DNA of 64,000 nucleotides, from positions 242,385-306,384 of the forward strand of contig NIVC01001361.1 of NCBI GenBank assembly GCA_002269645.1, in the 5' to 3' direction. A program made the position numbers and the translations under genes. Position 1 is the stretch's first letter. Every line of letters begins with the position of its first letter. This document shows positions 975 through 49,425 of this stretch, in pieces. The DNA comes from Macrostomum lignano (Eukaryota). Below the pieces are notes generated by a model that was given only the letters and a program-made list of their open reading frames with translations, was not told the origin of the DNA and ran no database searches.

Positions 975-3900
975 ATGAATTTTCTACGCAGGGCTAGCTT
1001 TTGTTCTTTGAAGTTATTTAACAGGTAAATTTTCAATTTTGTGTAGGCCTATGTTCAAATTTTTGTTGAAAATTGTTTAAATTTTGTCAAAATATTTTAC
1101 ATCTTTTGTTATGGTTTTTTTACTTTGAAGTCTATAGCAACAACGAATGCAGGTTATTAACTATATATTATAATAATTTTAATTAAATTTTGTGTCTATC
1201 AATATCATTAAGCACAAACTAAGAATAGAGGCATTGAGAAAACCTTAACATCTTGTCTATATTTTGTTTATTAATTTACCTTTTTCTATTCAACTTCTTT
1301 TATTTTATAACAATTGTAGTCAAATCAAGTTATCTTTCAAATTTTTCTGTTAATATTACAATTACTAAAATAGAATCATTGCCATTAATTTTGGGGATAT
1401 CATTAGAGGTAGACCTTTGCTTATGTTATGGTTAATTTGATAAAAGGATTTTCTAGCTTTGAACCTAATTTTATAAGTGTATTTTAAGTTCCAAATATGC
1501 AGTTAGAAACTATGAAAATTATTAAATATACTAATTGTTCTCCAAGTTCTCCAATAAAAACAATTCTATTTTTTAGATTATTTATTAAATAACAAAGATT
1601 AATCTTTTTTATCTAGTTTTATTAATAATAAATATTTTTTTAAATTTATTACCTAATGAAGTGTTTTATTTCATTTATGGTCCTTTATGTATTATAATTT
1701 TATATTATCTATCTAAAAAGTATTTGCATTGTATAAATAAATAGAAATTAGATAATATAATATCCAATTTTTCAAGATTTTTGAGACTCAAGATCTATAC
1801 TTTTGAGATGATCAAGATTCAATTAAGATTTAAGATTAACCCTAATTTGCATCTAATAGGCCTATTTATACTTTTATCTATCAATGACAATATTAATATA
1901 GTTACTTGTTAAATCAAATTTATATAATAATAATGGAAAAAACAATGATTATTTAATATTTGAGATTATTAATAACTTGATATATATCAAATATAAGTAT
2001 GATAACATTGGTAAGTTTGCTTCCAGTTTGTTTTGCAAATTTATTTTTAAGTTTGCATCGATACCAAACCATAATGTCTATGAGTATGAGCACTAGAAAG
2101 AGCAGTTTATAGAGAAGTAAATGGAGGGATTATGGAGCAATAGCTAGAGTAGTAGATAGGGCAATAAAAGTAGCAATAGATGAAGCAGTAAATAGAACAA
2201 TAGATAATATGGTATTAGAAATGGTATTAGAGTTTATCATATTTCTTATCCTTTTTGGCCATAGACATCATTTTCTACCATGGCACATTGGCACTATGTT
2301 TTAGTACCAATTTAAACTTAAAAATAATATTAGGAAACAGATTGGAAAATATCCATAACCACATAATATCACATTTAAAAATAGTCATATAATCACAAAT
2401 CTAGACTTTTTAAGATCTCAAAACAGAGATTAAGATTAAAAAAGTGCCAAGATCTTCATAATCTTGACAAAATAAAATATAATAATATTACTGGATTAAA
2501 ATTCATTATTCTAACTCTTATATCATTTAAACATTAAAAATAAAACATATCTTACATTTATATTTTTGGTAGGTTTTGTCTTTTATCAAGTTATTAAAAT
2601 TGATATTACATATAAAAAATGTTAGATTTTTAATTAATACTGAAAAAAGTTAACTTTAAGTTTTCTTTTTCTTCTATGATTCCACAATAGCTATAGATAT
2701 GACTACAGAAAGTTATAGATAAAAAGATTTATAACCAGAATATACAAATATGGATATAGTCATAAAAATGTCTAGTTCCTATATTTGTTAATATTAGGCT
2801 AACCACTTCACAATATATACTAAATTAGTAACTAAAACTTAAATGACTTAAGTTTTAATCCTATATGCACATTGTATAATTGAAGTGCTAGGGCAGGGAC
2901 TAAAGTTAAGATAAATGTTTTTTGCTTTCAATGCAAAAGGTATAAGGAGGCTCTTATGACTTAAAGTTCTTGGTGTTAAAGACTTAAGCAATAAATTCTA
3001 TATACGACATATATATTGTGTGGATTAGATAGTATTGGCTAAAATTAAGATTTATACAATTCTAGATTTTCTTTTTATGCAATAAATAAGTGCAGCTTAT
3101 TAATGAATGATGACCTTCAAAAATCCTTTTTATGTTCACTTTTAATAGTTTTTTGTTGATTTCAACTAACTATAGTATATGATTGGTGTTACAATCTATT
3201 TTTTTCAACTATAGACAGCTACATAGCAGTCCAGCTCTCTCAGGTTTCTTCACTGGTATGAGTGGAGCAAAAAATGAGATTGGTGCCCAGAGCAACAGAT
3301 TGTCTGATGGTAATGAGATCTTCGAGATTCAAAGTAAGAAATAAGAAATTACTGTTTCTCAATTTTCTTTAATAAAAATTCCTAAAAAAAGTTTTATTCA
3401 ATCTGTCTTTTCAATTCCAATTTCAGTACATCTTGTTAGGCCTCATTTTATGCAGACTTATTTGGAAGAGACGTGAGTTTATTTAAGCTATCATGCTTAT
3501 AGTAAACCATTTTATCTAATTTCTACCTTATTAAAATCTTCAGCAAACGATTTCTGGATCTGTTTGACCAGAAAGACTCTGGAGCCGAGCTGATCGGTTC
3601 ATTCACCTGCGAGATTGGGGCGCAAGATGAGGCGCTGCATATCTGGCGATTCAAGGGCGGCTACCAGGTATTTTATGTAGAAGGCTCACTCCCAGCCCTG
3701 GATTGAATGCAAGGGTCACTCCTAGCTATAGAATGAATGCAAGGGTCACTCCCAGCCCTGGATTGAATGCAAGGGTCACTCCCAGCTCTAAAATGAATGC
3801 AAAGGTCACTCCCAGCTCTAAAATGAATGCAGGGGTCACTCCCAGCTCTAGAATGAATGCAAGGGTCACTCCCAGCTCTAAAATGAATGCAAAGGTCACT

Positions 3901-6900
3901 CCCAGCTCTAGAATGAATGCAGGGGTCACTCCCAGCTCTAAAATGAATGCAAGGGTCACTCCCAGCCCTGGGTTGAATGCAAGGGTCACTCCCAGTCCTG
4001 GATTGAATGTAAGGGTCACTCCCAGTCCTGGATTGAATGCGGGGGTCACTCCCAGTCCTGGATTGAATGCAAGGGTCACTCCCAGCTCTAGAATGAATGC
4101 AGGGGTCACTCCCAGCTCTAGAATGAATGCAAGGGTCACTCCCAGCTCTAAAATGAATGCAAGGGTCACTCCCAGCCCTGGGTTGAATGCAAGGGTCATT
4201 CCCAGCTCTGGGATGAATGCAAGGGTCACTCCCAGCTCTGGGATGAATGCAAGGGTCACTCCCAGCCCTGGATTGAATGCAAGGGTCACTCCCAGCTCTA
4301 GAATGAATGCAAGGGTCACTCCCAGCCCTGGGTTGAATGCAAGGGTCATTCCCAGCTCTGGGATGAATGCAAGGGTCACTCCCAGCTCTGGGATGAATGC
4401 AAGGGTCACTCCCAGCCCTGGATTGAATGCAAGGGTCACTCCCAGCTCTAGAATGAATGCAAGGGTCACTCCCAGCTCTAAAATGAATGCAAAGGTCACT
4501 ACAGCTCTGGGATGAATGCAAGGGTCACTCCCAGCCCTGGGTTGAATGCAAGGGTCACTCCCAGTCCTGGATTGAATGCAAGGGTCACTCCCAGTCCTGG
4601 ATTGAATGCAAGGGTCACTCCCAGTCCTGGATGAATGCAAGGGTCACTCCCAGCTCTAGAATGAATGCAGGGGTCACTCCCAGCTCTAAAATGAATGCAA
4701 GGGTCACTCCCAGCTCTAAAATGAATGCAAGGGTCACTCCCAGCTCTGGATTGAAAGCAAGGGTCACTCCCAGCTCTAGAATGAATGCAAGGGTCACTCC
4801 CAGCTTTAGGATAAATACAAGGGTCACTCCTAGCCTCACTCTGGGATGAATGCAAGGGTCACTCCCAGATTTAGGATAAATTCAAGGGTCACTCCTAGCC
4901 TCACTCTGGGATGAATGCAAGGGTCACTCCCAGATTTAGGATAAATTCAAGGGTCACTCCTAGCCTCACTCTGGGGTGAATGCAAGGGTCACTCCTTACG
5001 TGCTAACCTTCTTACCTTAGTTAACTAAAAGTTTATCAGCTGGGTTAATCGCTGAACATCATTATAAGCATCAGTTGCCAACGGAACCGCCGCAGGCCTA
5101 CCAGAAGCACTACCACCTGTACCGGTCCGACCCCGAGCTGCTCAGCTATCGACAGAAGCGCAACGAAATGCTGCGCTCCCGGCGCAATCAAATCTGCTTG
5201 AAGTTCACCTTCTGGCCGGAGGTGGAGCCGCGCAATGGCGAGCACATCTACGAGCTGAGGAGCTACAATCTGCGTCCGGGTGAGCTAGGAGTAATGCATT
5301 TTGGAAATCTCACTCTGAATTTTGGAAATCTCACTCTGAATTTTGGAAATCTCACTCTGAATTTTGGAAATCTCACTCTGAATTTTGGAAATCTCACTCT
5401 GAATTTTGGAAATCTCACTCTGAATTTTGGAAATCTCACTCTGAATTTTGGAAATCTCACTCTGAATTTTGGAAATCTCACTCTGAATTTTGGAAATCTC
5501 ACTTTGAATTTCGGAAATCTCACTTTAGATTTTGAAAATCTCACTTTGAATTTCGGAAATCTCACTTTAGATTTTGAAAATCTCACTTTGAATTTCGGAA
5601 ATCTCACTTCAAATTTTGAAGATCTCACTTTGAATTTTGAGGATCTCACTCTGATGTATGAAAATCTCACTCTGATGTATGAAAATCTCACTCTGATGTA
5701 TGAAAATCTCACTCTGATGTATGAAAATCTCACTCTGATGTATGAAAATCTCACTCTGATGTATGAAAATCTCACTATAAAATTTCGAAAACCTCACTCT
5801 GTAATCTAAAATCGTATTCTTGTATTTTTGGAAGTCCTACTCTGTGTTGGAAATTTCTACTCAACATTTGGGAATCCTCCGCTTAGAAAGTGCAAAGCTT
5901 CGAGAGTATGAAGCAAAATGAATTTTTTTCTTAATGAGTTACCCACTCTTCAAAGCTTTCAATGGGGTGCTTTCATATCCCCGGCACTTCATATCTCAGA
6001 CACTTCATATCCCCGACACTTCATATCTCCGGCACTTCACATCTCAGGCACTTCACATCTCAGACACTTCATATCCCCGACACTTCATATCTCCGACACT
6101 TCATATCCCCGACACTTCATATCCCCGACACTTCATATCCCCGACACTTCATATCTCAGGCACTTCATATCCCGACACTTCATATCCCCGACACTTCATA
6201 TCCCCGACACTTCATATCCCCGACACTTCATATCCCCGACACTTCATATCCCCGACACTTCATATCCCCGACACTTCATATCCCCGACACTTCATATCTC
6301 CCGCACTTCACATCTCAGGCACTTCATATCCCCGACACTTCATATCTCCCGCACTTCACATCTCAGGCACTTCATATCTCCGACACTTCATATCTCCGAC
6401 ACTTCATATCCCCGACACTTCATATCCCCGACACTTCATATCCCCGACACTTCATATCTCCCGCACTTCACATCTCAGGCACTTCATATCCCCGACACTT
6501 CATATCTCCCGCACTTCACATCTCAGGCACTTCATATCTCCGACACTTCATATCTCAGACACTTCATATCTCAGACACTTCATATCCCCGACACTTCATA
6601 TCCCCGACACTTCATATCTCAGACACTTCATATCTCAGACACTTCACATCTCAGGCACTTCATATTTCCGACACTTCACATCTCAGGCACTTCATATCTC
6701 CGACACTTCATATCCCCGACACTTCATATCCCCGACACTTCATATCCCCGACACTTCATATCTCAGACACTTCATATATCCGACACTTCATATCTCCGTT
6801 AGGGTTAGAGTTAATCTGGTCAGAGATATGAAGTGTCGGAGATATGAAAATTCAGAAAAGAAAGCACTTTAACTTGTACTTTATTCGCATCGCAGGCAAT

Positions 6901-13671: not shown

Positions 13672-15229
13672 CAGGAGCGTCGCCATGGATTTTTTGGTGG
13701 GGGGGGGACAAAGCCAACAATTATACACGTACATGTACATGAATAAATTCCTACATGTACATTATTTTCAAAATCGGTATTATGAGCACTCATTTTGGCG
13801 CCGCAGGCACTCATTTTGGCACCGCAGGCACTCATTTTGGCGCCGCAGGCACTCATTTTGGCACCGCAGGCACTAATTTTAGCGCCGCAGGCACTCATTT
13901 TAGCGCCACAGGCACTCATTTTGGCTCGGCAGACACTAATTTTAGCGCCACAGGTACTCATTTTAGCGCCACAGGCACTCATTTTAGCGCCGCAGGCACT
14001 CATTTTAGCGCCACAGGCACTCATTTTAGAGCCGCAGGCACTCATTTTAGCGCCGCAGGCACTCATTTTAGCGCCACAGGCACTCATTTTAGCGCCGCAG
14101 GCACTCATTTTAGCGCCACAGGCACTCATTTTAGCGCCGCAGGCACTCATTTTGGCACCGCAGGCACTCATTTTAGCGCCACAGGCACTCATTTTAGCGC
14201 CACAGGCACTCATTTTAGCGCCGCAGGCACTCATTTTAGCGCCACAGGCACTCATTTTTAGCGCCACAGGCACTCATTTTAGCGCCGCAGGCACTCATTT
14301 TAGCGCCACAGGCACTCATTTTAGCGCCGCAGGCACTCATTTTAGCGCCACAGGCACTCATTTTAGCGCCGCAGGCACTCATTTTGGCACCGCAGGCACT
14401 CATTTTAGCGCCACAGGCACTCATTTTAGCGCCACAGGCACTCATTTTAGCGCCGCAGGCACTCATTTTAGCGCCACAGGCACTCATTTTTAGCGCCACA
14501 GGCACTCATTTTAGCGCCGCAGGCACTCATTTTAGCGCCACAGGCACTCATTTTTAGCGCCACAGGCACTCATTTTAGCGCCGCAGGCACTCATTTTAGC
14601 GCCGCAGGCACTCATTTTAGCGCCACAGGCACTCATTTTAGCGCCGCAGGCACTCATTTTAGCGCCGCAGGCACTCATTTTGGCACCGCAGGCACTCATT
14701 TTAGCGCCACAGGCACTCATTTTAGCGCCACAGGCACTCATTTTAGCGCCGCAGGCACTCATTTTGGCACCGCAGGCACTCATTTTAGCGCCACAGGCAC
14801 TCATTTTAGCGCCACAGGCACTCATTTTAGCGCCGCAGGCACTCATTTTAGCGCCACAGGCACTCATTTTTAGCGCCACAGGCACTCATTTTAGCGCCGC
14901 AGGCACTCATTTTAGCGCCACAGGCACTCATTTTTAGCGCCACAGGCACTCATTTTAGCGCCGCAGGCACTCATTTTGGCACCGCAGGCACTCATTTTAG
15001 CGCCACAGGCACTCATTTTTAGCGCCACAGGCACTCATTTTAGCGCCGCAGGCACTCATTTTAGCGCCACAGGCGCTATGGTTTGTCTCCCAGCTGCAAA
15101 AGTATTGATTTCCATAACGGGTCACCAGGTGGGGTGGGGGGGACAAAGCATTGGCATATGCCCCCCCCCCGATCTTTTACTGGGGGGGGGGACATGTCCC
15201 CTCTGTCGCCCCCATTGGCGACGCCCCTG
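13672..15229. mobile_element. Non-autonomous TIR element (hAT-like MITE) with an internally expanded 21-bp array
   Basis: Left end CAGGAGCGTCGCCATGG; right end reverse-complements to CAGGGGCGTCGCCAATGG; subterminal G-run GGGGACA / TGTCCCC motifs. No clean 8-bp TSD (flanks share only ATGTTG). Superfamily assignment is inference. Confidence 0.65.
13782..15072 (+). repeat. 21-bp minisatellite (TTTTAGCGCCGCAGGCACTCA)
   Basis: About 60 tandem units; occasional extra T causes the frame changes seen in the ORF track. Confidence 0.97.
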
Positions 15230-18824: not shown

Positions 18825-21475
18825 GGGAAGGAGACTGGATGAAGGGGGAGAGAGTGAGACTGGATGAAGGGTGAGAGTGAGACTGGATGAAGGGGAAGAG
18901 AGTGAGACTGGATGAAGGGGAAGAGAGTGAGACTGGATGAAGGGGAAGAGAGTGAGACTGGATGAAGGGGGAGAGAGTGAGACTGGATGAAGGGGAAGAG
19001 AGTGAGACTGAATGAATGGAGAGAGAGAGTGAGACTGGATGAAGGGGGAGAGAGTGAGACTGGATGAAGGGTGAGAGAGTGAGACTGGATGAAGGGGAGA
19101 GAGTGAGACTGGATGAAGGGTGAGAGTGAGACTGAATGAAGGGGGAGAGAGTGAGACTGAATGAAGGGGAGAGAGTGAGACTGAATGAATGGAGAGAGAG
19201 AGTGAGACTGGATGAAGGGGGAGAGAGTGAGACTGAATGAAGGGGGAGAGAGTGAGACTGGATGAAGGGGGAGAGAGTGAGACTGGATGAAGGGGGAGAG
19301 AGTGAGACTGGATGAAGGGTGAGAGTGAGACTGAATGAAGGGTAAGAGAGTGAGACTGGATGAAGGGTGAGAGTGAGACTGAATGAAGGGGGAGAGAGTG
19401 AGACTGAATGAAGGGGGAGAGAGTGAGACTGGATGAAGGGTGAGAGTGAGACTGAATGAAGGGGGAGAGAGTGAGACTGGATGAAGGGGGAGAGAGTGAG
19501 ACTGGATGAAGGGTGAGAGTGAGACTGGATGAAGGGGGAGAGAGTGAGACTGGATGAAGGGGGAGAGAGTGAGACTGGATGAAGGGTGAGAGTGAGACTG
19601 AATGAAGGGTAAGAGAGTGAGACTGGATGAAGGATGAGAGTGAGACTGAATGAAGGGGGAGAGAGTGAGACTGAATGAAGGGGAGAGAGTGAGACTGAAT
19701 GAATGGAGAGAGAGTGAGACTGGATGAAGGGGAGAGAGTGAGACTGAATGAAGGGGGAGAGAGTGAGACTGAATGAAGGGGGAGAGAGTGAGACTGAATG
19801 AAGGGGAGAGAGTGAGACTGAATGAAGGGGAGAGAGTGAGACTGGATGAAGGGGGAGAGAGTGAGACTGAATGAATGAAGGGGGAGAGAGTGAGACTGAA
19901 TGAAGGGGAGAGAGTGAGACTGGATGAAGGGGGAGAGAGTGAGACTGAATGAAGGGGAGAGAGTGAGACTGGATGAAGGGGGAGTGAGACTGGATGAAGG
20001 GGAGAGAGTGAGACTGGATGAAGGGGGAGAGAGTGAGACTGAATGAAGGGGGAGAGAGTGAGACTGAATGAAGGGGAGAGAGTGAGACTGAATGAAGGGG
20101 GAGTGAGACTGGATGAAGGGGGAGTGAGACTGGATGAAGGGGAAGAGAGTGAGACTGGATGAAGGGGAAGAGAGTGAGACTGGATGAAGGGGAAGAGAGT
20201 AAGACTGGATGAAGGGGGAGAGAGTGAGACTGAATGAAGGGGGAGAGAGTGAGACTGAATGAAGAGGAGAGAGTGAGACTGGATGAAGGGGGAGAGAGTG
20301 AGACTGAATGAATGAAGGGGGAGAGAGTGAGACTGAATGAAGGGGGAGAGAGTGAGACTGAATGAAGGGGAGAGAGTGAGACTGGATGAAGGGGGAGTGA
20401 GACTGGATGAAGGGGGAGAGAATGAGACTGAATGAAGGGGGAGAGAGTGAGACTGAATGAAGGGGGAGAGAGTGAGACTGAATGAAGGGAGAGAGAGTGA
20501 GACTGAATGAAGGGGAGAGAGTGAGACTGAATGAAGGGGAGAGAGTGAGACTGGATGAAGGGGGAGAGAGTGAGACTGAATGAATGAAGGGGGAGAGAGT
20601 GAGACTGAATGAAGGGGAGAGAGTGAGACTGGATGAAGGGGAAGAGAGTGAGACTGGATGAAGGGGGAGAGAGTGAGACTGAATGAAGGGGGAGAGAGTG
20701 AGACTGAATGAAGGGGAGAGAGTGAGACTGAATGAAGGGGGAGTGAGACTGGATGAAGGGGGAGTGAGACTGGATGAAGGGGGAGAGAGTGAGACTGAAT
20801 GAATGAAGGGGGAGAGAGTGAGACTGGATGAAGGGGAAGAGAGTGAGACTGGATGAAGGGGAAGAGGGTGAGACTGGATGAAGGGGAAGAGAGTGAGACT
20901 GGATGAAGGGGAAGAGAGTGAGACTGGATGAAGGGGAAGAGAGTGAGACTGGATGAAGGGGGAGAGAGTGAGACTGAATGAAGGGGGAGAGAGTGAGACT
21001 GAATGAAGGGGAGAGAGTGAGACTGGATGAAGGGGGAGAGAGTGAGACTGAATGAATGAAGGGGGAGAGAGTGAGACTGAATGAAGGGGAGAGAGTGAGA
21101 CTGGATGAAGGGGGGGTGAGACTGGATGAAGGGGGAGAGAGTGAGACTGAATGAAGGGGGAGAGAGTGAGACTGAATGAAGGGGGAGAGAGTGAGACTGA
21201 ATGAAGGGAGAGAGAGTGAGACTGAATGAAGGGGAGAGAGTGAGACTGAATGAAGGGGGAGTGAGACTGGATGAAGGGGGAGTGAGACTGGATGAAGGGG
21301 GAGAGAGTGAGACTGAATGAATGAAGGGAGAGAGAGTGAGACTGGATGAAGGGGAAGAGAGTGAGACTGGATGAAGGGGAAGAGAGTGAGACTGGATGAA
21401 GGGGAAGAGAGTGAGACTGGATGAAGGGGAAGAGAGTGAGACTGAATGAAGGGGGAGTGAGACTGGATGAAGGGG
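18825..21475 (+). repeat. ~25-bp purine-rich minisatellite (GAGACTGGATGAAGGGGGAGAGAGT), 2.65 kb
   Basis: Tandem units of 21-29 bp; the 990-aa minus-strand ORF is only the stop-free pyrimidine strand. Confidence 0.97.
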
Positions 21476-22573: not shown

Positions 22574-22930
22574 GACACCTCAAACCCCTCACTCCTATTA
22601 CCCCTCTGTGTACACCTCAAACCCCTCACTCCTATTACCCCTCTGTGTACACCTCAAACCCCTCACTCCTATTACCCTCTGTGTACACCTCGAACCCCTC
22701 ACTCCTATTACCCCTCTGTGTACACCTCAAACCCCTCACTCCTACTACCCCCTCTGTGTACACCTCAAACCCCTCATTCCTACTACCCCCTCTGTGTACA
22801 CCTCAAACCCCTCACTCCTACTACCCCCTCTGTGTACACCTCAAACCCCTCATTCCTTCTACCAGTCTTTGTACACCTTAAACCCCTCAAACTCCTCACT
22901 CCAACTACCCCATCAGCGTACACTTCAAAC
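22574..22930 (+). repeat. 37-bp minisatellite (TACACCTCAAACCCCTCACTCCTATTACCCCTCTGTG)
   Basis: About 9 tandem units, degenerating to the right. Confidence 0.93.
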
Positions 22931-23485: not shown

Positions 23486-24312
23486 GCCTCAGTGTCGTTA
23501 CTCCCTTCCTCAGTGTCTTTGCTCCCCTCCTCAGTGTCGTTACTCCCTTCCTCAGTGTCTTTGCTCCCCTCCTCAGTGTCGTTACTCCCCAGTCCTCAAT
23601 GTCGCTACTGCCCTCCTCAGTGTCGTTACTCCCTTCCTCAGTGTCGTTACTCCCCAGTCCTCAGTGTCGTTACTCCCCAGTCCTCAGTGTCGTTACTCCC
23701 CAGTGCTCAGTGTCGTTACTCCCTTCCTCAGTGTCGTTACTCCCTTCCTCAGTGTCGTTACTCCCCAGTCCTCAGTGTCGCTACTGCCCTCCTCAGTGTC
23801 GTTACTCCCTTCCTCAGTGTCGTTACTCCCCAGTCCTCAGTGTCGTTACTCCCCTCCTCAGTGTCGTTACTCCCCAGTCCTCAGTGTCGTTACTCCCCAG
23901 TCCTCAGTGTCGTTACTCCCCAGTCCTCAGTGTCGTTACTCCCCAGTCCTCAGTGTCGTTACTCCCCAGTCCTCAATGTCGCTACTGCCCTCCTCAGTGT
24001 CGTTACTCCCTTCCTCAGTGTCGTTACTCCCTTCCTCAGTGTCGTTACTCCCTTTCTCAGTGTCGTTACTCCCCAGTCCTCAGTGTCGTTACTCCCCAGT
24101 CCTCAGTGTCGCTACTGCCCTCCTCAGTGTCGTTACTCCCCAGTCCTCAGTGTCGTTACTCCCTTCCTCAGTGTCGTTACTCCCCAGTCCTCAGTGTCGT
24201 TACTCCCCTCCTCAGTGTCGTTACTCCCCAGTCCTCAGTGTCGTTACTCCCCAGTCCTCAGTGTCGTTACTCCCCAGTCCTCAGTGTCGTTACTCCCCAG
24301 TCCTCAGTGTCG
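23486..24312 (+). repeat. 20-23-bp minisatellite (CCTCAGTGTCGTTACTCCCCAGT)
   Basis: Tandem units with length variants. Confidence 0.96.
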
Positions 24313-25552: not shown

Positions 25553-27299
25553 CGTGAATTCCCGTGAACCCTCTAATTAATTCCTCATCTACAGATAAAT
25601 ATTCGATTTCTAGAGACTGAAGATCCTGCTGAAGCGAATTCTCCCATCTCACCCCGATAAACCTGTGAGTGGAGTCTAAACCCGTAACAGTAAAATTGCC
25701 TATTTGATGGAGATTTCCATAACGAAACTGCAGCCAAACTGAAACCTAGTCAAACACTAAGACGGGCAGACGTCGGGTCTATTTGTCCATTGCCTACCCC
25801 ACATTTGCCCAAAAAAATTCCCAAACCGAGGAACCGAAAGAGGAGGCCAAGAAATAAGTAGGATCTTTGCCTCGGACAGGCCGATATCAGCACTTGGCAA
25901 TCTGTGCCCACCCGGACAGCCTGTCCTCTTGGCCGACCCTTCGGTCAGACCCCAAGCCAGGCTCCTCCAGCGGACCCAGTCCTCGGCCTTGATCGATGAA
26001 GGCAGCATGTCACACAACACAGTGGACGCATAATGTCTTACCCAGTTCCGTTTGAACTCTCCAGAACTCTGTTTGATATCCCGTATGGAGAAGAAATTCT
26101 CCCCTTTAGCCCCGTCCAAAAAAATCGTTACTCAACGAGCCTGCGCGATGGTGTTGACACGCGCTATCAGCTATTTTAGGGCGCTATGCGCGAGACCCCA
26201 AATCCCGCCAATCTGCCAGTCGGCAACTCCCATTTTATCCCTTGAAATCCCATCTCGTTACTGCCGGTTTGTTGTTCACGATTGTGAGAGTGGAATTATG
26301 GGGAAGGATGCAGAGCTGATCCAAGGCGCAGTGACCATCACGGCTTATGAGTACTGCCTCATGTTCTGCATGGTGTAGCCTTGCTTCACACTTTTGGTTT
26401 ATGACTTAAAAATACAGGGCGATAACTGACCAAAACGAAGTCGTCAAAAAACGATGGATTTGAGCACTTCTACACACGATTGGGTTGAGCACTCTACACA
26501 CCGTTGAGCATTCACCGCACTATTGCGGTTGCCCTGTAAAAAACTGAGTTCACAAAAAGTCCAAACAAAACTTTATCCCTAACTCATAATTTCCCTACAC
26601 ATTTTCCTTAGTGACTCCCCTAATTCAGTTCAATTTTAATTCCGCAATTTGCTTTTCGATCCCAAATCGCTTGAAACTCGCCATCAGTCAATTAGCAAAA
26701 TGCATTCTAAAATTAAGCTTCCAAATTACAGCTCGGAGCTCATGTGCTCGGATAGACTAAGCTTCCTGCCCCCCCCCCGTTGAAAATGGCCAGCTCTCTT
26801 GCCTAGGCCATAAGCTTAGCTCAATTTTCCTCTATATATTTGCCGCATACACGCAGAGGCGATACAAGTTCGCAAACAAAATTGCATGCGGTAGCCAATC
26901 AGTCAATTTCTGGAATCGATGCCAATTTCTAAATGTTCTTTCAGCACCAGATAGGCAGCCTTGGCGACTCTTTTCCTGCCTCGGTTGAAGCGTTTCTTAT
27001 CCTGCATGACTTGCTGAAGGCCTGATATTCATGTACAGTGTGAGGCAAATCCTGCACAAAGAGCAGACTGGCTAAAATGGGTCACTGCTTTTGCAGGAAA
27101 CCGGATGCTTTTAGCGGAGTCATCGCGGTCTATTGTGCGCCAGCTGTTTGCTGATTGCTTCACCTGTCTCCTGAGTCTCTTTTTCATTCTATTCGAGTGG
27201 CGCAGCCTGATCTGTTGTTGACTTCTCTCCTGTATAATGTAACAGCTTCATACCTTCAGTTAGCTTTACACTGCTCTATTTAGTAGCTTAATAGAAGAG

Positions 27300-33149: not shown

Positions 33150-36100
33150 ATGTCAAAAAATTCGGTTTACCTGGTTCTAGCAGCAACTCTGGCGGCGATA
33201 TGCGCCGTTTCTGATGCGACGCAACTCTGCTTAGATATGCAGACCGCAATCCAGGCCGAGGCCGCTAACGTTGTTATCTGCGGGTTTCCAAGGTCGTCTT
33301 ATAGCACCGGCGGCATTGAGACAGCAAGAATACCAGTTGCCTGTCATCGAAAAGCTACAGGCATCGCCAGCCTACTTCAAGCTGAGGCCGGCTACCAAAA
33401 TATTCAGGATTCTATGGATATTTGTTTCATGAGAGTGAAGCCTAATGATGAGGGCATTACGATTTTTAACATTGACCTGGTCGAAGACAATTATGGTGAT
33501 GCTTTTAAAAAGCGAGAAATTCGTCTGCAGGACTCGGTTGCGGAGATTGTCGGAATCTCGTCGGGCTTTGCGATCAAAGGCCCAATCAGCAGCATCAACC
33601 CGGCCGTGTTTGCTGACACTGGATCGCCGCAAAGGGCTCAGCTTAAGAACCTGTACCTGGCCTTTACCGAACTGCAGACTCTAGATTTGTCTCTGTTGAA
33701 GCCATTGAATCTGCAAGAGCTTTTTCTCGTCAATAATTCTAAACTGACTCGGATTGTTAACTACAAAGACGCTCCAATGTCCGATTTGACAACTTTCATC
33801 TCGTGGAATAATAACCCGTCGCTGATTGACTGTCGCAATCTGCTTGGTCTGCCTAGTACTATAACAAAAATCGGCATTCTGCAGAAAGGCCTAAATAATA
33901 GTTGCGCCCAGTGCCATCTGCCGAAAAAATGCGAGCTGCTGGTCAGAATGAATGAGCCAGAGTTGAAATATTTTCCTGGCTTAGGTTCGCAATCGCAAAA
34001 TTTTCCTTTTCCTATGGAACATATGAAATTTCGTCCAGCGACCTTCCTTCCTGAATTTGTGCCCTACAAGTCGTACAATATTGCTCCAGAAACCACAAAA
34101 GCAGCCACCTGTCAGACGGAATGCAGTTGTCAAAAGTGGCCTCCGCCAGGTAAGAAGCTAAATGATTCAATAGACTAAACTTTTGCTTATTCAAATGTTT
34201 TTTGAGTGGCTGGCGTGTGTCAAAGTCAAACTTTTGAAAAGTTCTTGGAAGTCGATTTTGACGTTAGATACACAATTTTGGCATAGCTGTAGTTCGTGTC
34301 GTTCAGATTGGTGCCCCGACGTTCAAAGTGCCTCAAATAATTTGAGGGGTGCCACTGTGAGGATTTCATAGTCTCTGGCGCTCTCTAAACGTTACTGGCT
34401 AGATGGTTGCCAGTTAGGGAGGTTGCCAGTTAGGGGGTTTCCAGTTAGGGAGGTTGCCAGTTGGGAAGGTTGCCAGTTGGGAAGGTTGCCAGTTGGGAAG
34501 GTTGCCAGTTGGGAAGGTTGCCAGTTGGAAAGATTCATCCCGACGGCAGTCTCATTCCGACGGCGCTTTTTGCGCCAGCAAGTTTAGCGGCAGAGGATCA
34601 GCATATTAGAAGATCAAAGTGCGCAGAAGCCGAGCGTGGAAATGTCAGGTTAAGCACTTCCTAGACTTTAAGACAAAATAATTTTTAGTCTACATCTTCA
34701 CCATTTCTTTTATTTTCGGATAGCGAAATACGAGTAGTTTACAACAGACTTTTAGAGGACCACACGGGTGCGTCTGACTTCGTCTGGTTTGTCTTAACTC
34801 GCATTTCAAGAATTGCGTTCAGCTCGATTTTTAAGACTTGATTTCGAATTAGCTCGTACAACGCGCTTGTCTATCCGAATCTTTGAAAGCTTTCATACTT
34901 TCTCGAAAGGTCACTTTCATGAATTTACAGGGTGGCCTACGTAACGTGCCTGATGAAACAGGGTGACGACTCGACTGTCAGTTAAAATTTTGTCAACATT
35001 GGTTGCAAATCAAAAAAGTTATTAACGTTACGCGTTACGTGGGCCACCCAGTATAATCTTAACTTTGAAACCCTGTATTTGTCAAACCCACATTAGAAAT
35101 GCTTTCGTTTTCCGTCATACTTTCAAAATTTTTAATGATAGTGATTAAAATTGGGACTGCGATGATTGACTGCCAGTGACAATTGACTCTCAGTGATAAT
35201 TGGCTATCAGTGACAATTGACTGCTAGTGACAATTGACTGCCAGTGACAATTGGCTATCAGTGATAATCGACTGTCAGTGACAATTGACTGTCAGTGACA
35301 ATTGACTGTCAGTGACAATTGACTCTCAGTGATAACTGGCTATCAGTGACAATTGACTGTCAGTGACAATTGGCTATCAGTGACAATTGACTGTCAGTGA
35401 CAATTGGCTATCAGTGAAAATTGACTGCCAGTGACAATTGGCTATCAGTGACAATTGACTGCTAGTGACAATTGACTGCCAGTGACAATTAACTGCCAGT
35501 TACTGCCAGTGACAATTGACTGCCAGTGACAATTGGCTATCAGTGACAATTGGCTATCAGTGATAATTGACTGTCAGTGACAATTGACTGCCAGTGACAA
35601 TTGGCTATCAGTGATAATTGGCTATCAGTGACAATTGACTGTCAGTGACAATTGGCTATCAGTGACAATTGACTGTCAGTGACAATTGGCTATCAGTGAC
35701 AATTGGCTATCAGTGACAATTGACTGTCAGTGAAAATTGACTGCCAGTGACAATTGGCTATCAGTGACAATTGACTGCTAGTGACAATTGACTGCCAGTG
35801 ACAATTGACTGCCAGTTACTGCCTGTGACAATTGACTGCTAGTGACAATTGACTGCCAGTGACAATTGACTGCCAGTTACTGCCAGTGACAATTGACTGC
35901 CAGTGACAATTGACTGCCAGTTACTGCCAGTGACAATTGACTGTTGGTGACAATTGACTGCCAGTTACTGCCAGTGACAATTGACTGTTGGTGACAATTG
36001 ACTGCCAGTGACAATTGACTGCCAGTTACTGCCTGTGACAATTGACTGCTAGTGACAATTGACTGCCAGTGACAATTGACTGCCAGTTACTGCCAGTGAC

Positions 36101-36657
36101 AATTGACTGCCAGTGACAATTGACTGCCAGTTACTGCCAGTGACAATTGACTGTTGGTGACAATTGACTGCCAGTTACTGCCAGTGACAATTGACTGTTG
36201 GTGACAATTGACTGCCAGTGACAATTGACTGCCAGTTACTGCCAGTGACAATTGACTGTCAGTGACCCAATAGTGCTGTTGTAGGAAATTTGCAGCTAAA
36301 CTGTAAAATTCTAGTTTTTTTCGAATTGCTACCAGTCAATTGTTACTGGCAGGCATGCTGGCAAATGCCCGAATTTATGGTTTAACATAGGCATCCGATT
36401 TTCCCCATCCATATAAAAAAACAGTGGACTCGACAAAAAACAGCGCAGCTACTAGCGGAGAAAGCGGCACCTCCAGCGGCACCTCCAGCGGCACCTCCAG
36501 CGGCACCTCCAGCGGCACCTCCAGCGGCAACGCCGTCGGCCAGGAGAGACAGGCGACTGGAGACGGCGGCGGCGGCGGCGGCACAGGCCGGGTGTCGGGC
36601 TCAACTCCTGTCATTGCCATCGCTTTGGTCTTGTTCCGTCAGTTAAGCCAGCTCTAG
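33150..36657 (+). CDS. Secreted leucine-rich-repeat protein with Ser/Gly/Thr stalk and probable GPI-anchor signal, 410 aa, 2 exons
   Basis: Exon 1 33150-34149 (donor G|GTAAGA) joins exon 2 36425-36657 (acceptor ACAG|TG) in phase 1. Signal peptide MSKNSVYLVLAATLAAICAVSDA; LRRs LKNLYLAFTELQTL and LQELFLVNNSKLTRI; LRRCT-like NNNPSLIDC; stalk (GTSS)x5; hydrophobic tail PVIAIALVLFRQLSQL. Confidence 0.8.
34405..34530 (+). repeat. 16-bp minisatellite (GTTGCCAGTTGGGAAG) in LRR-gene intron
   Basis: About 8 tandem units. Confidence 0.9.
34928..35051. mobile_element. 124-bp Tc1/mariner-type MITE
   Basis: TA|CAGGGTGGCCTACGTAACG ... CGTTACGTGGGCCACCCAG|TA: 19-bp near-perfect TIRs flanked by TA on both sides. 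Confidence 0.8.
35165..36265. repeat. 17-bp quasi-palindromic minisatellite (TGACTGCCAGTGACAAT) in LRR-gene intron
   Basis: Tandem units centred on CAATTG, with a shorter TTACTGCCAG variant enriched in the right half. Confidence 0.96.
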
Positions 36658-43848: not shown

Positions 43849-46800
43849 TCAATGTGAGTCAAGGATGTGGCGCTGGCCTCCGAAGGTCATGCCACTCTGG
43901 CTGGCCACCTGGCCCTGTCCCGGCCCCATCTGCAGGCCAATGACCGAGGCGCCCTCTTTGCTGCCCTCGCTAACGCGGCCGTCGGCGATGTGACGGATGC
44001 CGCCGAACGACATGCCGCTCTGGTTGGCCCCCTGCTTCTGGCCGAGACCCATCTGCAGGCCGATGACGGCAGAGCCCTCCGGCGTCATCTGGTCGCAGCT
44101 GAGAATAAAAAACAAGTTGACTATTGTCAGTTAAAATGAACGATGGAGTCAATTTAACTATCATTGAGTGCGCTAATTGAAATGGAGCTCCTTGGGAGTG
44201 AGCTACTTGGGAGTGAGCTACTTGGGAGTGAGCTACTTGAGAGTGAGCTACTTGGGAGTGAGCTACTTGGGAGTGAGCTACTTGGGAGTGAGCTACTTGG
44301 GAGTGAGCTACTTGGGAGTGAGCTACTTGGGAGTGAGCTACTTGGGAGTGAGCTACTTGGGAGTGAGCTACTTGGGAGTGAGCTACTTGGGAGTGAGCTA
44401 CTTGGGAGTGAGCTACTTGGGAGTGAGCTACTTGGGAGTGAGCTACTTGGGAGTGAGCTACTTGGGAGTGAGCTACTTGGGAGTGAGCTACTTGGGAGTG
44501 AGCTACTTGGGAGTGAGCTACTTGGGAGTGAGCTACTTGGGAGTGAGCTACTTGGGAGTGAGCTACTTGGGAGTGAGCTACTTGGGAGTGAGCTACTTGG
44601 GAGTGAGCTACTTGGGAGTGAGCTACTTGGGAGTGAGCTACTTGGGAGTGAGCTACTTGGGAGTGAGCTACTTGGGAGTGAGCTACTTGGGAGTGAGCTA
44701 CTTGGGAGTGAGCTACTTGGGAGTGAGCTACTTGGGAGTGAGCTACTTGGGAGTGAGCTACTTGGGAGTGAGCTACTTGGGAGTGAGCTACTTGGGAGTG
44801 AGCTACTTGGGAGTGAGCTACTTGGGAGTGAGCTACTTGGGAGTGAGCTACTTGGGAGTGAGCTACTTGGGAGTGAGCTACTTGGGAGTGAGCTACTTGG
44901 GAGTGAGCTACTTGGGAGTGAGCTACTTGGGAGTGAGCTACTTGGGAGTGAGCTACTTGGGAGTGAGCTACTTGGGAGTGAGCTACTTGGGAGTGAGCTA
45001 CTTGGGAGTGAGCTACTTGGGAGTGAGCTACTTGGGAGTGAGCTACTTGGGAGTGAGCTACTTGGGAGTGAGCTACATCACTAGAGCTAAAAGTCACTAT
45101 GACAGAAAAGCTATACGTAATCAATGGGGAAACGCCCTCACCGAATGTCCGCAATGTGCCGCTGACCACCAATAGACATGCCGGCTTGGCTGGCGCACTT
45201 GTTGGTGCCCATCTGCAGGCCGATGACTGCGCTGCCCTCTGGCGTCATGTTGTCGCAGCGGATATCCGCGATGTGCCGCTGGCCACCCATGGACATGCCT
45301 AAGTACGAATTTGTTCAATGAATTAAGATTTTTTCAAAGACACAATAGAAAAAATGCCAATAATCTCCCAGAATTTAGAACACTTATAGTTTCTGTCAGC
45401 TCATATATAAAAGGTTTTTGCTTAATACGCGTAATATTTGGAATGAGGGTTGTGGGCCACCTTGGCGCAACGCTTTATCGACATCGGTTCCACAACCAGC
45501 GCTCTGAGGCAATTCTGGCCGTTCCGCTGACTCCTGAGCACACATGCAAGCGCGCCAATACTGTACTCAGGCACGCACTCATACACGCTCACACAGGGTG
45601 TACAGCGGCCCTGACTTTCTAATCGTCAGGCATGTACACTCTCTGTGCCTTGGGACGCTGGGCCCTCGTGGCTGTGAATCGCATGACAACTTCCCAGCCG
45701 AATTTTGAGCACACGCCCCAAATGAATCAAATCAGGAGTTGTGGCGTGAGAGTCAGACACGCTTACTGCTGAGCTCTTCTGCCCCGGGATTTCTGCTTTG
45801 TAAAGTTATTTACGCTACATATCGGCAATTATCAAGGAGTTCAAGTCGGAGGCGCGGCACTCACCTTTCTGGCTGGCGCACTTGTTGGTGCCCATCTGCA
45901 GGCCGATGACCGCGTTGCCTTCTGGCGTCATCTCGTCGCAGCGAATGTCCGCGATGTGCCGCTGGCCGCCCATGGACATACCTGTGGAAGAATTTTTGGG
46001 GCATAACCCTTGAATTTAACCCACTGACAATTACTCACCTGGCCCCTTAAAGCATTGCGTTTGCTTGTGTAGAAACTAATGAGTAACTCATCTAGCAAAA
46101 TTAGACTCACCCTTCTGGCTGGCGCACTTGTTGGTGCCAGCCTGCAGGCCGATGATGCCCTCGGAGGAGCGCAGCTGCTCGGCGGTGAACTGGCGCGCAT
46201 TCTTGTAGGTGGGACGGGGTCCGCACACGGGGCCGCGCATGCCGTGGCGTTGGCACTGGAAGAAGAAGCAGGAAGTGGATGTTTGTAGGCGGATGTTGAA
46301 GCGGATGTTTGGAGGCAGATTTTGAAGCGGATGTTTGGAGACGGATGTTGATCAAAGCGGATGTTTGGAGCGGATGTTGAAGCGGATGTTTGGAGGTGGA
46401 TGTTGAAGCGGATGTTTGGAGCGGATGTTGAAGGTGATGTTTGGAGCGGATGTTGAAGGTGATGTTTGGAGCGGATGTTGAAGCGGATGTTTGGAGTGGA
46501 TGTTTGGAGCAGAAGCCAGGCTAGTAAAAGTCGTACCTCAGTTCCAAGCTGAAGCAGCGTGTTTAACACCTGGGCCATGTTTCGACCTTCGTAGAGGTCG
46601 ACAGTTTGGAACAGACTGGCCTTTGGAACACCGTAGGCCATTGCACAGTTCAGAAAAACCTGGAAATTAAGATTTTGAGGAAAATCTAGATCCATTAAAA
46701 GCAGCTGTGATTAATTAAACCCTAAGGTCCATCAGTCAATAACTGGTGATTCAGACTGCTGGCCCCACGATGACTAATATCCAAAGTCCAAACTGATCCC

Positions 46801-47867: not shown

Positions 47868-48819
47868 ACAGTTCCTTTCTTTCTAACCCCCCCCCCCAAA
47901 CCAGCTTCCCTTCGGTTTAGGGGAAGAGCGAAGAATCCGCTGGTGTGGGGTGAAGGGAGCCAAAGCGGTCTAGAGGAAAATGTCAGGCATTGGGGAATGC
48001 GGAATTCGGGAGCATTAGAGGGGAACGATGGAGGCAAACTTTCAATTCTTTCGTATCGCTATGGCTTTGAAGCTTTGTCAGCCCGCCCCAGCGTTGCCAA
48101 AGCCGGTAGGGGCGCTTCAATCCTCCCCACCATACCTGAAGGCTCTTAATTCCCTTTAGCTATAGGTAGATACTTGTGTTTACGCCGACTGATTTACGAC
48201 TGCGTGCCCTAAATGCGCAACAGGGCTTAAACAACTTGCTCAGTCAATCTTGATGAAGAAGAGAAGCGCTGGTGGTCGGCTTTTATTCTGGGCGCCTGCG
48301 CCCAAACAATATGCAACATGCTGTCGAAATTTCCTTCTTATCGAAGCCTACAAAAAAATACCAGCAACTTCAGCCGGTTTGGTAAATTTAAATGTCACTC
48401 ACTGCTGATAGAAAGTCCAACTAACTAAAGACCAATAAACTGAAAGCTTTATTGAAAGCAATTTAAGATGCGTTACCAAAGACACGTACATTTACTTCGT
48501 TTCTTAGCACAGAACTAGAAATTTAATCGCCTTCTAAACTAATTAAGCTAGTCCGACTGAAGCTGGCGACTTCCTAACTTCATATGCTTTCTTGACAGTA
48601 AAGAAGCTGAGAAAACTGTTGTTAAGTGCTAAAAAACTGGAGAATTCAATTATGGCTCATGTATTTTAAGGCGAACTCGGGCTCCTTAGTCAGATTTTTA
48701 CATTTGTCACTCGTGGCTGGCTGGCTGTCTGTCACTCCTTGTCTGTCGGTTATTACGTCCCGCAGGCAAACGTCGCTATCCCGGTTATTATCGCTTTAGA
48801 GGTCACTCAATTCTGGCTA

Positions 48820-48925
48820 AGCTGTCACTCCTAAGGTCACTCAATGCTGACTATACTGTCACTCCTAAGGTCACTCAATGCTGACTATACTTTTACTCCT
48901 AAGGTCACTCAATGCTGGCTATTAC
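48820..48925 (+). repeat. 34-bp short tandem array (AAGGTCACTCAATGCTGACTATACTGTCACTCCT)
   Basis: About 3 units. Confidence 0.85.
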
Positions 48926-49254
48926 CAAATAGTTACATTCATTTGAAAATTACTAAGGCTTGAAGCAGAAACTGGTACTCGAGACCAGACAGTAAGTATC
49001 AGATTGATTGAGCATCTTTATACCTATCATCTATTTTTTATAGTACATCTAGTTACGCAATGCCTTACAATATTATATCGATCAAAAAATTTGCATTGCT
49101 TACGAGCGCAAAACATCAGTAATGACTTTTTAATAAAGTAAATGCAAGTGCTAGCCCTGAAAAAGAAAAGCGACGTAGTTAACCAAAGCGAGTAAATCTG
49201 AAATTTCAATCCGCTCCAGTCATCGAAGATTTTTAGCTTTTTATCCCTCCCAGA

Positions 49255-49425
49255 GTCATTCAAGGCCGTTGGCCGTATATCCCGCCAAGGTTACTCATGG
49301 TCTGGCCTTGTATCCCTCTCAAGGTCACTCAAGGCCGTTGGTCTTATATCCCTCTCAAGGTCACTCAAGGTAATTGGCCTTATATCCGCCTCAAGGTCAA
49401 CTCAAGGCCGTTGGTCATACATCCT
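49255..49425 (+). repeat. ~36-bp short tandem array (CAAGGCCGTTGGTCTTATATCCCTCTCAAGGTCACT)
   Basis: About 4-5 degenerate units. Confidence 0.8.

What the first reader, a model, noticed from the sequence alone, without database searches (positions are those of the whole stretch)
3684..49425. Eight minisatellite arrays share the exact core TCACTC (GAGTGA)
Seen: arrays with units of 15-37 bp, otherwise dissimilar, each carry TCACTC. They are 3.7 kb (GGTCACTCCC), 5.3 kb (TCTCACTCTG), 18.8 kb (reverse, TCTCACTCTC), 22.6 kb (CCTCACTCCT), 25.1 kb (AGTCACTCTC), 44.2 kb (reverse, GCTCACTCCC), 48.8 kb and 49.3 kb (GGTCACTCAA; these last two may be related). Three more have one mismatch: 13.8 kb GCACTC, 23.5 kb TTACTC, 35.2 kb TCACTG. 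That is about 8 of 21 arrays, against roughly 1 percent chance per ~25-bp unit on both strands. Inference: a sequence-specific factor (recombination initiator or chromatin protein) or a common seed element nucleates or stabilises tandem expansion, analogous to minisatellite cores and PRDM9 motifs in mammals. This would be a motif-directed satellite-birth system.
Basis: partly seen in the sequence, partly recalled or inferred. Interest (0 to 1): 0.85.

Follow-up and report, generated by a model that had tools for sequence, protein, structure and literature searches.

The report
Flatworm minisatellites sharing the word TCACTC
Eight otherwise unrelated minisatellite arrays in this stretch of the flatworm Macrostomum lignano genome do share the word TCACTC, but that word is one of a set of favoured short words in the genome's very numerous minisatellites, so the case for a dedicated motif-driven repeat-making system is weak.

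Summary
TRF finds 21 minisatellite arrays in the window, and 8 carry TCACTC in their consensus unit at the stated places.

The window belongs to the Mlig_3_7 assembly of Macrostomum lignano. About a third of randomly sampled DNA in this genome is minisatellite.

TCACTC in tandem register is the most frequent of 20 hexamers counted genome-wide: 361,228 matches, against an estimated mean of about 61,000 and 9,575 to 95,123 for four rearrangements of the same letters. It is at background frequency in non-array DNA.

It is not a sharp motif:
- Sibling words (CTCACT, ATCTCA, TCTCAC, CACTCT, GTCACT, TCACTG) reach 165,000 to 259,000.
- A trinucleotide model trained on arrays that lack the core ranks TCACTC 29th of 4096 and predicts 3.3 times the uniform rate.
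- In an unbiased 178-kb sample, only 3 of 75 arrays carry it.

The window's 8 of 21 is therefore a local excess, at about 5e-5 per window under the vocabulary null. That is within reach of a genome-scale scan.

The arrays share no flanks and no similarity beyond the core, except one clearly related adjacent pair and a second that shares a 9-mer. This rules out one transposable element.

The word is over-represented and slightly protected inside arrays, but nothing shows a binding factor or a motif-directed birth process.

The parts
3681..4995 (+). Minisatellite, 30-bp unit x 43, core GGTCACTCCC. It fills almost the whole intron between two NIPSNAP exons. Its last copies are 65-bp compound units with extra cores (TCACTCCTA, CCTCACTCTGGG).
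   Evidence: TRF; sequence; NIPSNAP exons
5298..5801 (+). Minisatellite, 21-bp unit x 24, core TCTCACTCTG. It starts 19 nt after a GT splice donor of the NIPSNAP gene.
   Evidence: TRF; sequence; junctions
18831..21475 (-). Minisatellite, 25-bp unit x 108, core on the reverse strand (GTCTCACTCTCTCC). It is 2645 bp here, about 240 bp in contig C352 and about 960 bp in C2131.
   Evidence: TRF; paralogue spacing
22575..22889 (+). Minisatellite, 37-bp unit x 8.5, core CCCCTCACTCCTAC.
   Evidence: TRF
25127..25558 (+). Minisatellite, 23-bp unit x 19, core CAGTCACTCTCC.
   Evidence: TRF
44185..45076 (-). Minisatellite, 15-bp unit x 59.5 (99% matches), core on the reverse strand (GCTCACTCCCAAG). It lies in an intron between two calponin-repeat exons of a reverse-strand gene.
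   Evidence: TRF; translations; CH domain
48800..48922 (+). Short minisatellite, 34-bp unit x 3.6, two cores per unit (AGGTCACTCAAT and CTGTCACTCCTA).
   Evidence: TRF; sequence
49242..49414 (+). Short minisatellite, 36-bp unit x 4.9, core AGGTCACTCAAGG. It is related to the 48800 array (shared AGGTCACTCAA, z = 6.9).
   Evidence: TRF; sequence; pairwise alignment
13786..15074 (+). Minisatellite, 21-bp unit x 61, with the one-mismatch word GCACTC. It belongs to a dispersed family also seen on contigs C1, C3 and C1750.
   Evidence: TRF
23487..24314 (+). Minisatellite, 23-bp unit x 38, with the one-mismatch word TTACTC.
   Evidence: TRF
35165..36266 (-). Minisatellite, 17-bp unit x 69, with the one-mismatch word TCACTG on the reverse strand.
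   Evidence: TRF

Best explanation
The eight arrays are ordinary, length-variable minisatellites in a genome that is saturated with them. The window is from Macrostomum lignano, assembly Mlig_3_7, where about a third of randomly sampled DNA is minisatellite.

Across this genome, repeat units are built from a biased vocabulary of short words. Those words are rich in the trinucleotides CTC, TCA, TCT and CAC and their complements, and poor in A/T-rich and CG-containing trinucleotides. TCACTC (TCA + CTC) is one of the most favoured words and sits in roughly 4-6% of arrays genome-wide.

The window holds a local excess (8 of 21). Part of it comes from adjacent arrays that are related: 48800 with 49242 clearly, and the variant end of 3681 with 5298 through a shared 9-mer. 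The rest is a regional concentration of the kind a genome-scale scan will pick out.

Shown here:
- the arrays and the shared word
- the genome-wide over-representation
- the comparable enrichment of sibling words
- the trinucleotide model's prediction
- the absence of shared flanks
- length variation between paralogous copies

Inferred: the vocabulary reflects how arrays arise and spread in this genome. That could be slippage-prone sequence, or descent of many families from a limited stock with rapid remodelling of units. It does not require a dedicated factor that reads TCACTC.
For: Genome identity. The assembly has 764,410,778 bases in 5269 contigs, and the longest contig is 2,680,987 bases. 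This matches Table 2 of PMC5730564.

Unbiased sample. In 177,802 bases from 18 contigs, 58 kb lies in 75 arrays, and only 3 of them carry TCACTC. In that sample, 167 of 2080 hexamers are shared by at least as many arrays.

Whole-genome tandem counts:
- TCACTC 361,228
- CTCACT 259,379
- ATCTCA 254,685
- TCTCAC 239,830
- CACTCT 227,412
- GTCACT 213,688
- TCACTG 164,657
- CACTCC 144,829
- CTGAAG 114,086
- lowest: CCTTAC 9,575

Trinucleotide model. An order-2 model trained on units without the core predicts TCACTC at 3.3 times uniform, rank 29 of 4096. It correlates with the counts at r = 0.81.

Vocabulary.
- CTC, TCA, TCT and CAC are 1.5-1.8 times commoner in units than in non-array DNA.
- 29 of 68 random arrays hold a word within one mismatch of TCACTC. 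That ties for first place with CTCTCA, ATCTCA, CCCTCA and others.
- Several 5-mers (TCTCA, CTGAA, CACTC, CCTGA) are each 3-4 times enriched.

Composition check. In the random sample the word occurs as often as unit composition predicts: 3 seen, 1.25 to 3.2 expected.

No single source. There are no shared flanks. Similarity round the core is no greater among window arrays than to arrays elsewhere, 1.06 against 1.10 bases.

Neighbour effects.
- Neighbouring arrays of different families share 8-mers 7.5% of the time, against 3.2% for distant ones.
- A cluster on contig C1 shares CCACCTCACTCC.
- Arrays sit at the same positions in three paralogous copies but with different lengths.
Against: The local excess is large:
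- Under the order-2 vocabulary null, a hexamer shared by 8 or more of 21 units arose once in 20,000 simulated windows.
- Fisher's test for the window against the random sample gives p = 0.0002.

TCACTC is the top of all 20 words counted. It is 2.2 times commoner than TCACTG, which has the same model prediction.

Inside arrays the core window is about half as variable as the average window (0.54, one-sided p = 0.018, 11 arrays). It also tends to sit near the 5' start of the array.

The trinucleotide model was trained on only 65 units. It may absorb degenerate copies of the same motif, which would make the composition explanation partly circular.
Confidence: 0.5

Rival explanations
1. Local descent. 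The core-bearing arrays of this region derive from one or a few ancestral arrays that were copied locally. Their units were then remodelled by indels, internal duplications and homogenisation of different variants, until only a short patch remains in common.
For: - Adjacent arrays share 9-11-mers: 48800 and 49242 share AGGTCACTCAA (z = 6.9), and the variant end of 3681 shares CTCACTCTG with 5298.
- Neighbouring arrays in the random sample share 8-mers 2.3 times more often than distant ones.
- On contig C1, four to five arrays between 89 and 279 kb share CCACCTCACTCC, and arrays at 50 and 55 kb share GCACTCCTG.
- CTGAAG arrays share a long block, CCTGAAGGATCGGGAAGG.
- The end of array 3681 shows a unit gaining a second core through a small insertion.
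Against: Most window pairs show nothing beyond the hexamer. Mean extension is 1.06 bases, the same as to arrays on other contigs. There are no shared flanks. The arrays lie on both strands over 46 kb and are interleaved with 13 arrays that lack the core. Neutral divergence would not leave the same six bases intact in all lineages.
Confidence: 0.2
2. TCACTC, more exactly S-TCACT-S/Y, is a cis-acting element that nucleates or stabilises tandem expansion. It could be read by a protein or be a preferred site of slippage or nicking.
For: - It is the highest of 20 hexamers counted genome-wide, and overlapping words fall off on both sides.
- It is at background in non-array DNA.
- The core window is half as variable as the rest of the unit inside arrays (p = 0.018).
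- The core lies near the 5' start of arrays (mean offset/period 0.25, n = 10).
- The flanking positions are restricted: C or G before the core in 20 of 21 arrays, and never G after it.
- The window excess is about 5e-5 under the vocabulary null.
Against: - Sibling words that occur in arrays without the core (ATCTCA, TCTCAC, TCACTG) are nearly as enriched.
- The residual over the trinucleotide model is at most 1.8-fold, within the scatter of the other words.
- Only 3 of 75 random arrays carry the core, so more than 90% of arrays arise and persist without it.
- No factor, hotspot or recombination data are available.
- The variability and position tests rest on 10-11 arrays and on approximate TRF boundaries.
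Confidence: 0.15
3. Constraint from transcription. Many arrays sit in introns, and selection on the sense strand of the pre-mRNA shapes which words and orientations survive, for example by avoiding donor-like GTGAG runs. This would favour TCACTC on the sense strand.
For: The three arrays whose host gene could be read have the core on the gene's sense strand: 3681 and 5298 in NIPSNAP, and 44185 in the calponin-like gene. The complement GAGTGAG resembles a splice donor.
Against: Only three cases, with no annotation for the other five arrays. Such selection could explain orientation but not why the word is common. Genome-wide forward and reverse counts are equal, as they must be without knowledge of gene strand.
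Confidence: 0.07
4. Common transposable element. The core is a remnant of one mobile element that carried a repeat-prone segment to all eight sites.
For: Some minisatellite families in this genome are dispersed. The 13786 family and the 9001 family recur on other contigs.
Against: Self-comparison of the window with arrays masked finds no repeated flanks next to the core arrays. The units are unrelated outside 6-9 bases. No terminal repeats were seen.
Confidence: 0.03

Closest known systems
Jeffreys' minisatellite core (GGGCAGGAXG) shared by human hypervariable minisatellites
   Same: Arrays with different unit lengths and sequences share a short exact word. The arrays vary in length between copies of the locus. 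The word is over-represented among arrays genome-wide.
   Different: The word here is only 6 bases and is C/T-rich with one A. Most of its excess is predicted by the trinucleotide make-up of units, and sibling words are almost as common. No link to recombination was or could be tested. This comparison rests on my knowledge of the human literature, not on a tool result.
PRDM9 hotspot motif (CCNCCNTNNCCNC) in mammals
   Different: The sequences do not match: CCACCTCACTCC has C where the motif requires T at position 7, by direct reading. No zinc-finger factor was sought or found, and no crossover or break maps are available. This is resemblance by idea only.
Cryptic simplicity and slippage-born minisatellites (Tautz 1986; Haber and Louis 1998)
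   Same: The favoured words are one step from (TC)n or (AC)n dinucleotide repeats (TC-AC-TC, A-TCTC-A). Units gain extra cores through small internal insertions. Arrays expand and contract between paralogous copies.
   Different: Purine/pyrimidine strand asymmetry of units is only slightly above control (0.616 against 0.596, not significant). The arrays are therefore not simply degenerate (TC)n tracts.
Tandem-repeat richness of the Macrostomum lignano genome (Wudarski et al. 2017, PMC5730564)
   Same: Same assembly. The paper reports an unusually high fraction of simple and tandem repeats (15% of the genome) that hampers assembly.
   Different: The paper does not describe unit vocabularies or shared words. 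Full-text searches for Macrostomum with minisatellite or satellite DNA found no such description. My TRF sample gives a higher array fraction, about 33%.

Membership tests
Minisatellite (VNTR) arrays | Head-to-tail copies of a 10-100 bp unit | tested here: met
   TRF periods are 15-37 bp, with 3.6-108 copies and 77-99% matches.
Minisatellite (VNTR) arrays | Copy number varies between alleles or paralogous copies | tested here: met
   The distance between conserved flanks differs between contigs: 2645, about 240 and about 960 bp for array 18831. Arrays 22575, 25127 and 44185 differ in the same way.
Core-sharing minisatellite superfamily (Jeffreys type) | Otherwise dissimilar units share an exact short core | tested here: met
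   8 of 21 arrays carry it. No more than 5 shared any hexamer in 2000 shuffles. Pairwise alignments show little beyond the core.
Core-sharing minisatellite superfamily (Jeffreys type) | The core is enriched among arrays genome-wide beyond what unit composition predicts | tested here: inconclusive
   It is top of 20 hexamers (361,228 matches). The order-2 model predicts 3.3 times uniform, leaving a residual of 1.65-1.8-fold within the scatter. Random sample: 3 seen against 1.25-3.2 expected. Sibling words reach 165,000-259,000.
Core-sharing minisatellite superfamily (Jeffreys type) | Association with meiotic recombination or instability | not testable with these tools
   No population, pedigree or break-mapping data are available.
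Transposable-element-derived satellite family | Arrays embedded in homologous flanking element sequence (terminal repeats, shared flanks) | tested here: not met
   Self-BLAST of the array-masked window finds no shared flanks at the core arrays. The only local repeats are the calponin-repeat exons at 43.9-46.2 kb.
PRDM9-type motif-directed system | A sequence-specific factor that binds the motif | not tested
   No search for a candidate factor was made. Finding a zinc-finger gene would not show binding.
PRDM9-type motif-directed system | A sharply defined motif whose one-mismatch variants are much rarer | tested here: not met
   TCACTG gives 164,657 matches against 361,228 for TCACTC. Overlapping and sibling words reach 214,000-259,000.

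The most novel reading that the evidence does not exclude
S-TCACT-S/Y is a real cis-acting element of minisatellite dynamics in Macrostomum lignano. It would be a preferred site of slippage, nicking or protein binding that raises the chance that a unit expands and is kept uniform. Its regional concentration, as in this window and at 89-360 kb of contig C1, would mark domains where that process is active. This would be a lead to why about a third of this genome is minisatellite.
Probability: 0.12. Interest if true: 0.8.

Novelty: new member of a known kind. Interest (0 to 1): 0.3.

Why it matters
If the word were a true cis-acting core, it would give an experimentally tractable handle on how minisatellites are born and maintained. 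Macrostomum lignano can be made transgenic, and its genome is unusually rich in such arrays.

As things stand, the useful result is narrower. Minisatellite units in this genome use a biased short-word vocabulary, with TCACTC at or near the top, and word usage is regionally clustered. This is worth a proper genome-wide analysis, but it needs no new kind of system.

The case also shows that shared-hexamer coincidences in repeat-rich genomes must be judged against the genome's own repeat vocabulary, not against a uniform model.

Tried and rejected
1. More random genome sample. Loci from later searches could not be cut either. The family-level sample therefore stays at 75 arrays.

2. Finding the organism through protein homology. 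The search with the 830-aa ferlin exon found nothing because of the length filter. Assembly statistics settled the identity instead.

3. Fetching paralogous DNA through an exact-protein look-up. No record was found.

4. Strand bias of core arrays on contig C1. I rejected this. The listing prints forward-strand matches of a contig first and stops at 100, so it says nothing about strand.

5. A second core, TTTAGCG, seen in several units. Genome-wide it gives only 44,862 matches, below the mean.

6. Homopurine/homopyrimidine asymmetry as the cause of the vocabulary. The difference is not significant (0.616 against 0.596).

7. A longer conserved element round the core. Overlapping words fall off on both sides. 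The 12-mer CCACCTCACTCC is a local subfamily on C1 only.

8. Non-coding RNA or tRNA origin of the units. There are no Rfam or tRNA hits in the window.

Full report
**What is in the window.** Tandem Repeats Finder lists 42 rows that collapse to 27 arrays. Of these, 21 are minisatellites with a period of 10-130 bp and at least three copies. The three one-mismatch cases are also correct. The word occurs 276 times in the window against 36 expected, almost all of it inside these arrays. In 2000 shuffles of the units, no hexamer was shared by more than five arrays. Given each unit's own mono- or dinucleotide composition, 0.43 or 0.90 arrays with the word are expected.

**Where the window comes from.**
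- The window is contig C1361:242385-306384 of an assembly of 764,410,778 bases in 5269 contigs, whose longest contig has 2,680,987 bases.
- These figures match the Mlig_3_7 assembly of the flatworm Macrostomum lignano: 5270 scaffolds, 764,424,962 bases, the same longest scaffold, and a separate mitochondrial genome (PMC5730564).
- The genes in the window are a NIPSNAP gene (+, 3.5-7.2 kb), a calponin-like gene (-, 43.9-47.1 kb), a ferlin with very large exons (+, 52.1-60.6 kb) and a bHLH gene (+, 61.8-62.9 kb).
- Arrays 3681 and 5298 lie in NIPSNAP introns. Array 3681 begins 13 nt after a GT donor and ends 25 nt before the acceptor.
- Array 44185 lies between two calponin-repeat exons.

**Is it one element?** No. 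With arrays masked, the window has no repeated flanks next to the core arrays. Pairwise local alignment of the 21 units shows one clearly related pair, 48800 and 49242 (z = 6.9). Otherwise only 8-9-mers that include the core are shared. The number of matching bases next to the core is the same among window arrays (1.06) as between window arrays and core arrays from other contigs (1.10).

**Genome-wide frequency, unbiased sample.**
- I took 18 stretches (177,802 bases) from 18 contigs. 58 kb (33%) lies in 75 minisatellite arrays, so this genome is saturated with them.
- Only 3 of the 75 arrays carry TCACTC. 167 of 2080 hexamers are shared by at least as many array families in that sample.
- Given unit composition, 1.25 (mononucleotide) to 3.2 (dinucleotide) arrays are expected.
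- In non-array DNA the word is at background: 47 seen, 54 expected.

**Genome-wide frequency, whole-genome counts.** The genome search counts every match of X N{9,31} X N{9,31} X on both strands.

| Hexamer | Matches |
|---|---|
| TCACTC | 361,228 |
| CTCACT | 259,379 |
| ATCTCA | 254,685 |
| TCTCAC | 239,830 |
| CACTCT | 227,412 |
| GTCACT | 213,688 |
| TCACTG | 164,657 |
| CACTCC | 144,829 |
| CTGAAG | 114,086 |
| CCTCAC | 113,085 |
| GCGATT | 101,773 |
| TCACCT | 95,123 |
| ACTCTA | 86,083 |
| CATTCC | 57,055 |
| TCCACT | 50,608 |
| TTAGCG | 44,862 |
| GATCCA | 25,645 |
| GAAGTC | 16,623 |
| ACCTAG | 9,959 |
| CCTTAC | 9,575 |

The mean per hexamer, scaled from my sample, is about 61,000. 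TCACTC is therefore the top of 20 words and about six times the mean. It is 4 to 38 times above four rearrangements of the same letters (TCACCT, CATTCC, TCCACT, CCTTAC). The fifth, CTCACT, overlaps it.

**Why the excess is not a specific motif.**
- Sibling words are almost as frequent, including words found in arrays without the core: ATCTCA, TCTCAC and TCACTG.
- An order-2 Markov model trained on 65 random-sample units that lack the core ranks TCACTC 29th of 4096 and predicts 3.26 times the uniform rate.
- That model's predictions correlate with the counts at r = 0.81 over 18 hexamers. TCACTC's residual of 1.65-1.8-fold lies within the scatter.
- The trinucleotides CTC, TCA, TCT and CAC are 1.5-1.8 times commoner in units than in non-array DNA. 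AAA, ATA, AAT and ACG are about half as common.
- 29 of 68 random arrays hold a word within one mismatch of TCACTC. That ties for first of 2080 with CTCTCA, ATCTCA, CCCTCA, CTCAAG and TCTCAA.
- Several 5-mers are each enriched 3-4-fold: TCTCA, CTGAA, CACTC and CCTGA.

TCACTC is thus a leading member of a vocabulary, not a unique signal.

**What still speaks for some role of the word.**
- It exceeds TCACTG, which has the same model prediction, 2.2-fold.
- Overlapping words fall off on both sides of it.
- Inside 11 arrays the six core positions vary about half as much as an average six-base window (0.54, one-sided p = 0.018).
- The core tends to lie near the 5' start of the array.
- In 21 arrays the base before the core is C or G in 20, and the base after it is never G.

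These are weak tests on few arrays. The variability test carries a mild ascertainment bias, because arrays were chosen for an intact core in the consensus.

**The local excess.**
- Against the random sample, the window's 8 of 21 gives Fisher p = 0.0002.
- In 20,000 simulated windows of 21 units drawn from the order-2 vocabulary, a hexamer shared by 8 or more units arose once, and by 7 or more six times.
- The genome holds about 12,000 windows of this size. So roughly 0.6 to 3.6 such windows are expected by chance in a whole-genome scan. I do not know how many windows the first stage read.
- If adjacent arrays with shared longer words are merged (48800 with 49242, and the variant end of 3681 with 5298 through the shared CTCACTCTG), the count of independent loci falls from eight to about six. 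By my own binomial estimate, six or more of 19 loci at 5% per locus has a probability of about 2e-4 for this one word.
- Regional clustering of word usage also appears elsewhere. Pairs of different-family arrays within 10 kb share an 8-mer 7.5% of the time, against 3.2% for pairs from different contigs.
- Contig C1 has a run of arrays between 89 and 279 kb that share CCACCTCACTCC.

**Age and behaviour of the arrays.** The unique flanks of arrays 18831, 22575, 25127 and 44185 recur at 95-99% identity on contigs C352/C4117 and C2131. There is an array-sized gap at the same place in each copy, but the lengths differ: 2645, about 240 and about 960 bp for 18831. For 3681, the units on C352 and C2131 are the same family at 99% and 92% identity. 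The arrays therefore predate the divergence of these copies and behave as length-variable minisatellites.

**Verdict.**
- The inference of a motif-directed satellite-birth system is only partly supported. The word is over-represented in arrays genome-wide and slightly protected within them. Most of that follows from a general trinucleotide vocabulary, more than 90% of arrays do without it, and nothing bears on a factor or on recombination.
- The best reading (confidence 0.5) is a vocabulary effect plus a local concentration, helped by related neighbouring arrays and by selection of an extreme window.
- Local descent of all eight arrays (0.2) and a true cis-acting core (0.15) remain open.
- One transposable element is nearly excluded (0.03).

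Full-text searches found no paper describing shared words or cores in Macrostomum minisatellites.

Noticed in passing
window 3668-5020 and 5279-6831: Two introns of the NIPSNAP gene consist almost entirely of minisatellite arrays. Array 3681-4995 starts 13 nt after the GT donor and ends 25 nt before the acceptor AG. The next intron holds arrays 5298-5801 and 5972-6798.
   Followed up: partly
window 3681, 5298 (+) and 44185 (-): In the three arrays whose host gene could be read, TCACTC lies on the sense strand of the gene. The complement GAGTGAG would resemble a splice donor. Only three cases, and not tested genome-wide.
   Followed up: partly
G000 contigs C352:600.7-605.1 kb, C4117:30.0-32.1 kb, C2131:12.9-36.6 kb: The region exists in three copies with 95-99% identical flanks. 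Arrays sit at the same positions but their lengths differ up to ten-fold. C2131 has an extra insertion of about 1 kb at the point matching window position about 23022.
   Followed up: partly
L001-L018 (random sample of the genome): About 33% of 178 kb of randomly chosen DNA lies in minisatellite arrays of 11-108 bp units, roughly one array per 2.4 kb. The genome paper reports 15% for simple and tandem repeats.
   Followed up: partly
window 13786-15074; L012:4806-5232; C1:452 kb, 478 kb, 797 kb; C3:101 kb, 228 kb: The 21-bp family GCACTCATTTTAGCGCCGCAG is dispersed over many contigs. The 28-bp family of window 9001-9259 recurs in L001:4665-6344. Some minisatellite families are therefore mobile or very old.
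   Followed up: partly
C1:195 kb, 565 kb, 695 kb, 697 kb; L018:6044-8896: Arrays with different 31-34-bp units share the long block CCTGAAGGATCGGGAAGG. This is a clearer example than TCACTC of a minisatellite superfamily related by descent.
   Followed up: no
window 52144-60619 (+): A ferlin gene (C2, FerI, FerB, ferlin dsRNA-binding-like and ferlin C-terminal domains) has unusually long exons, with open frames of 1314 and 830 codons. A minisatellite (59582-59946) sits in the gap before the last exon.
   Followed up: partly
window 50259-50567: This stretch matches its own reverse complement at 68% identity over 317 bases, so it is a diverged palindrome or inverted repeat of unknown nature.
   Followed up: no
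L008:2285-2985 and 9027-9871: TRF reports 84-bp periodic arrays that read as tandem C2H2 zinc-finger coding repeats on the reverse strand, flanking large 24-bp minisatellites. I judged this by eye only.
   Followed up: no
window 1-3500: The first 3.5 kb has 28.5% G+C, against 40-52% for the rest of the window. It holds no arrays.
   Followed up: no
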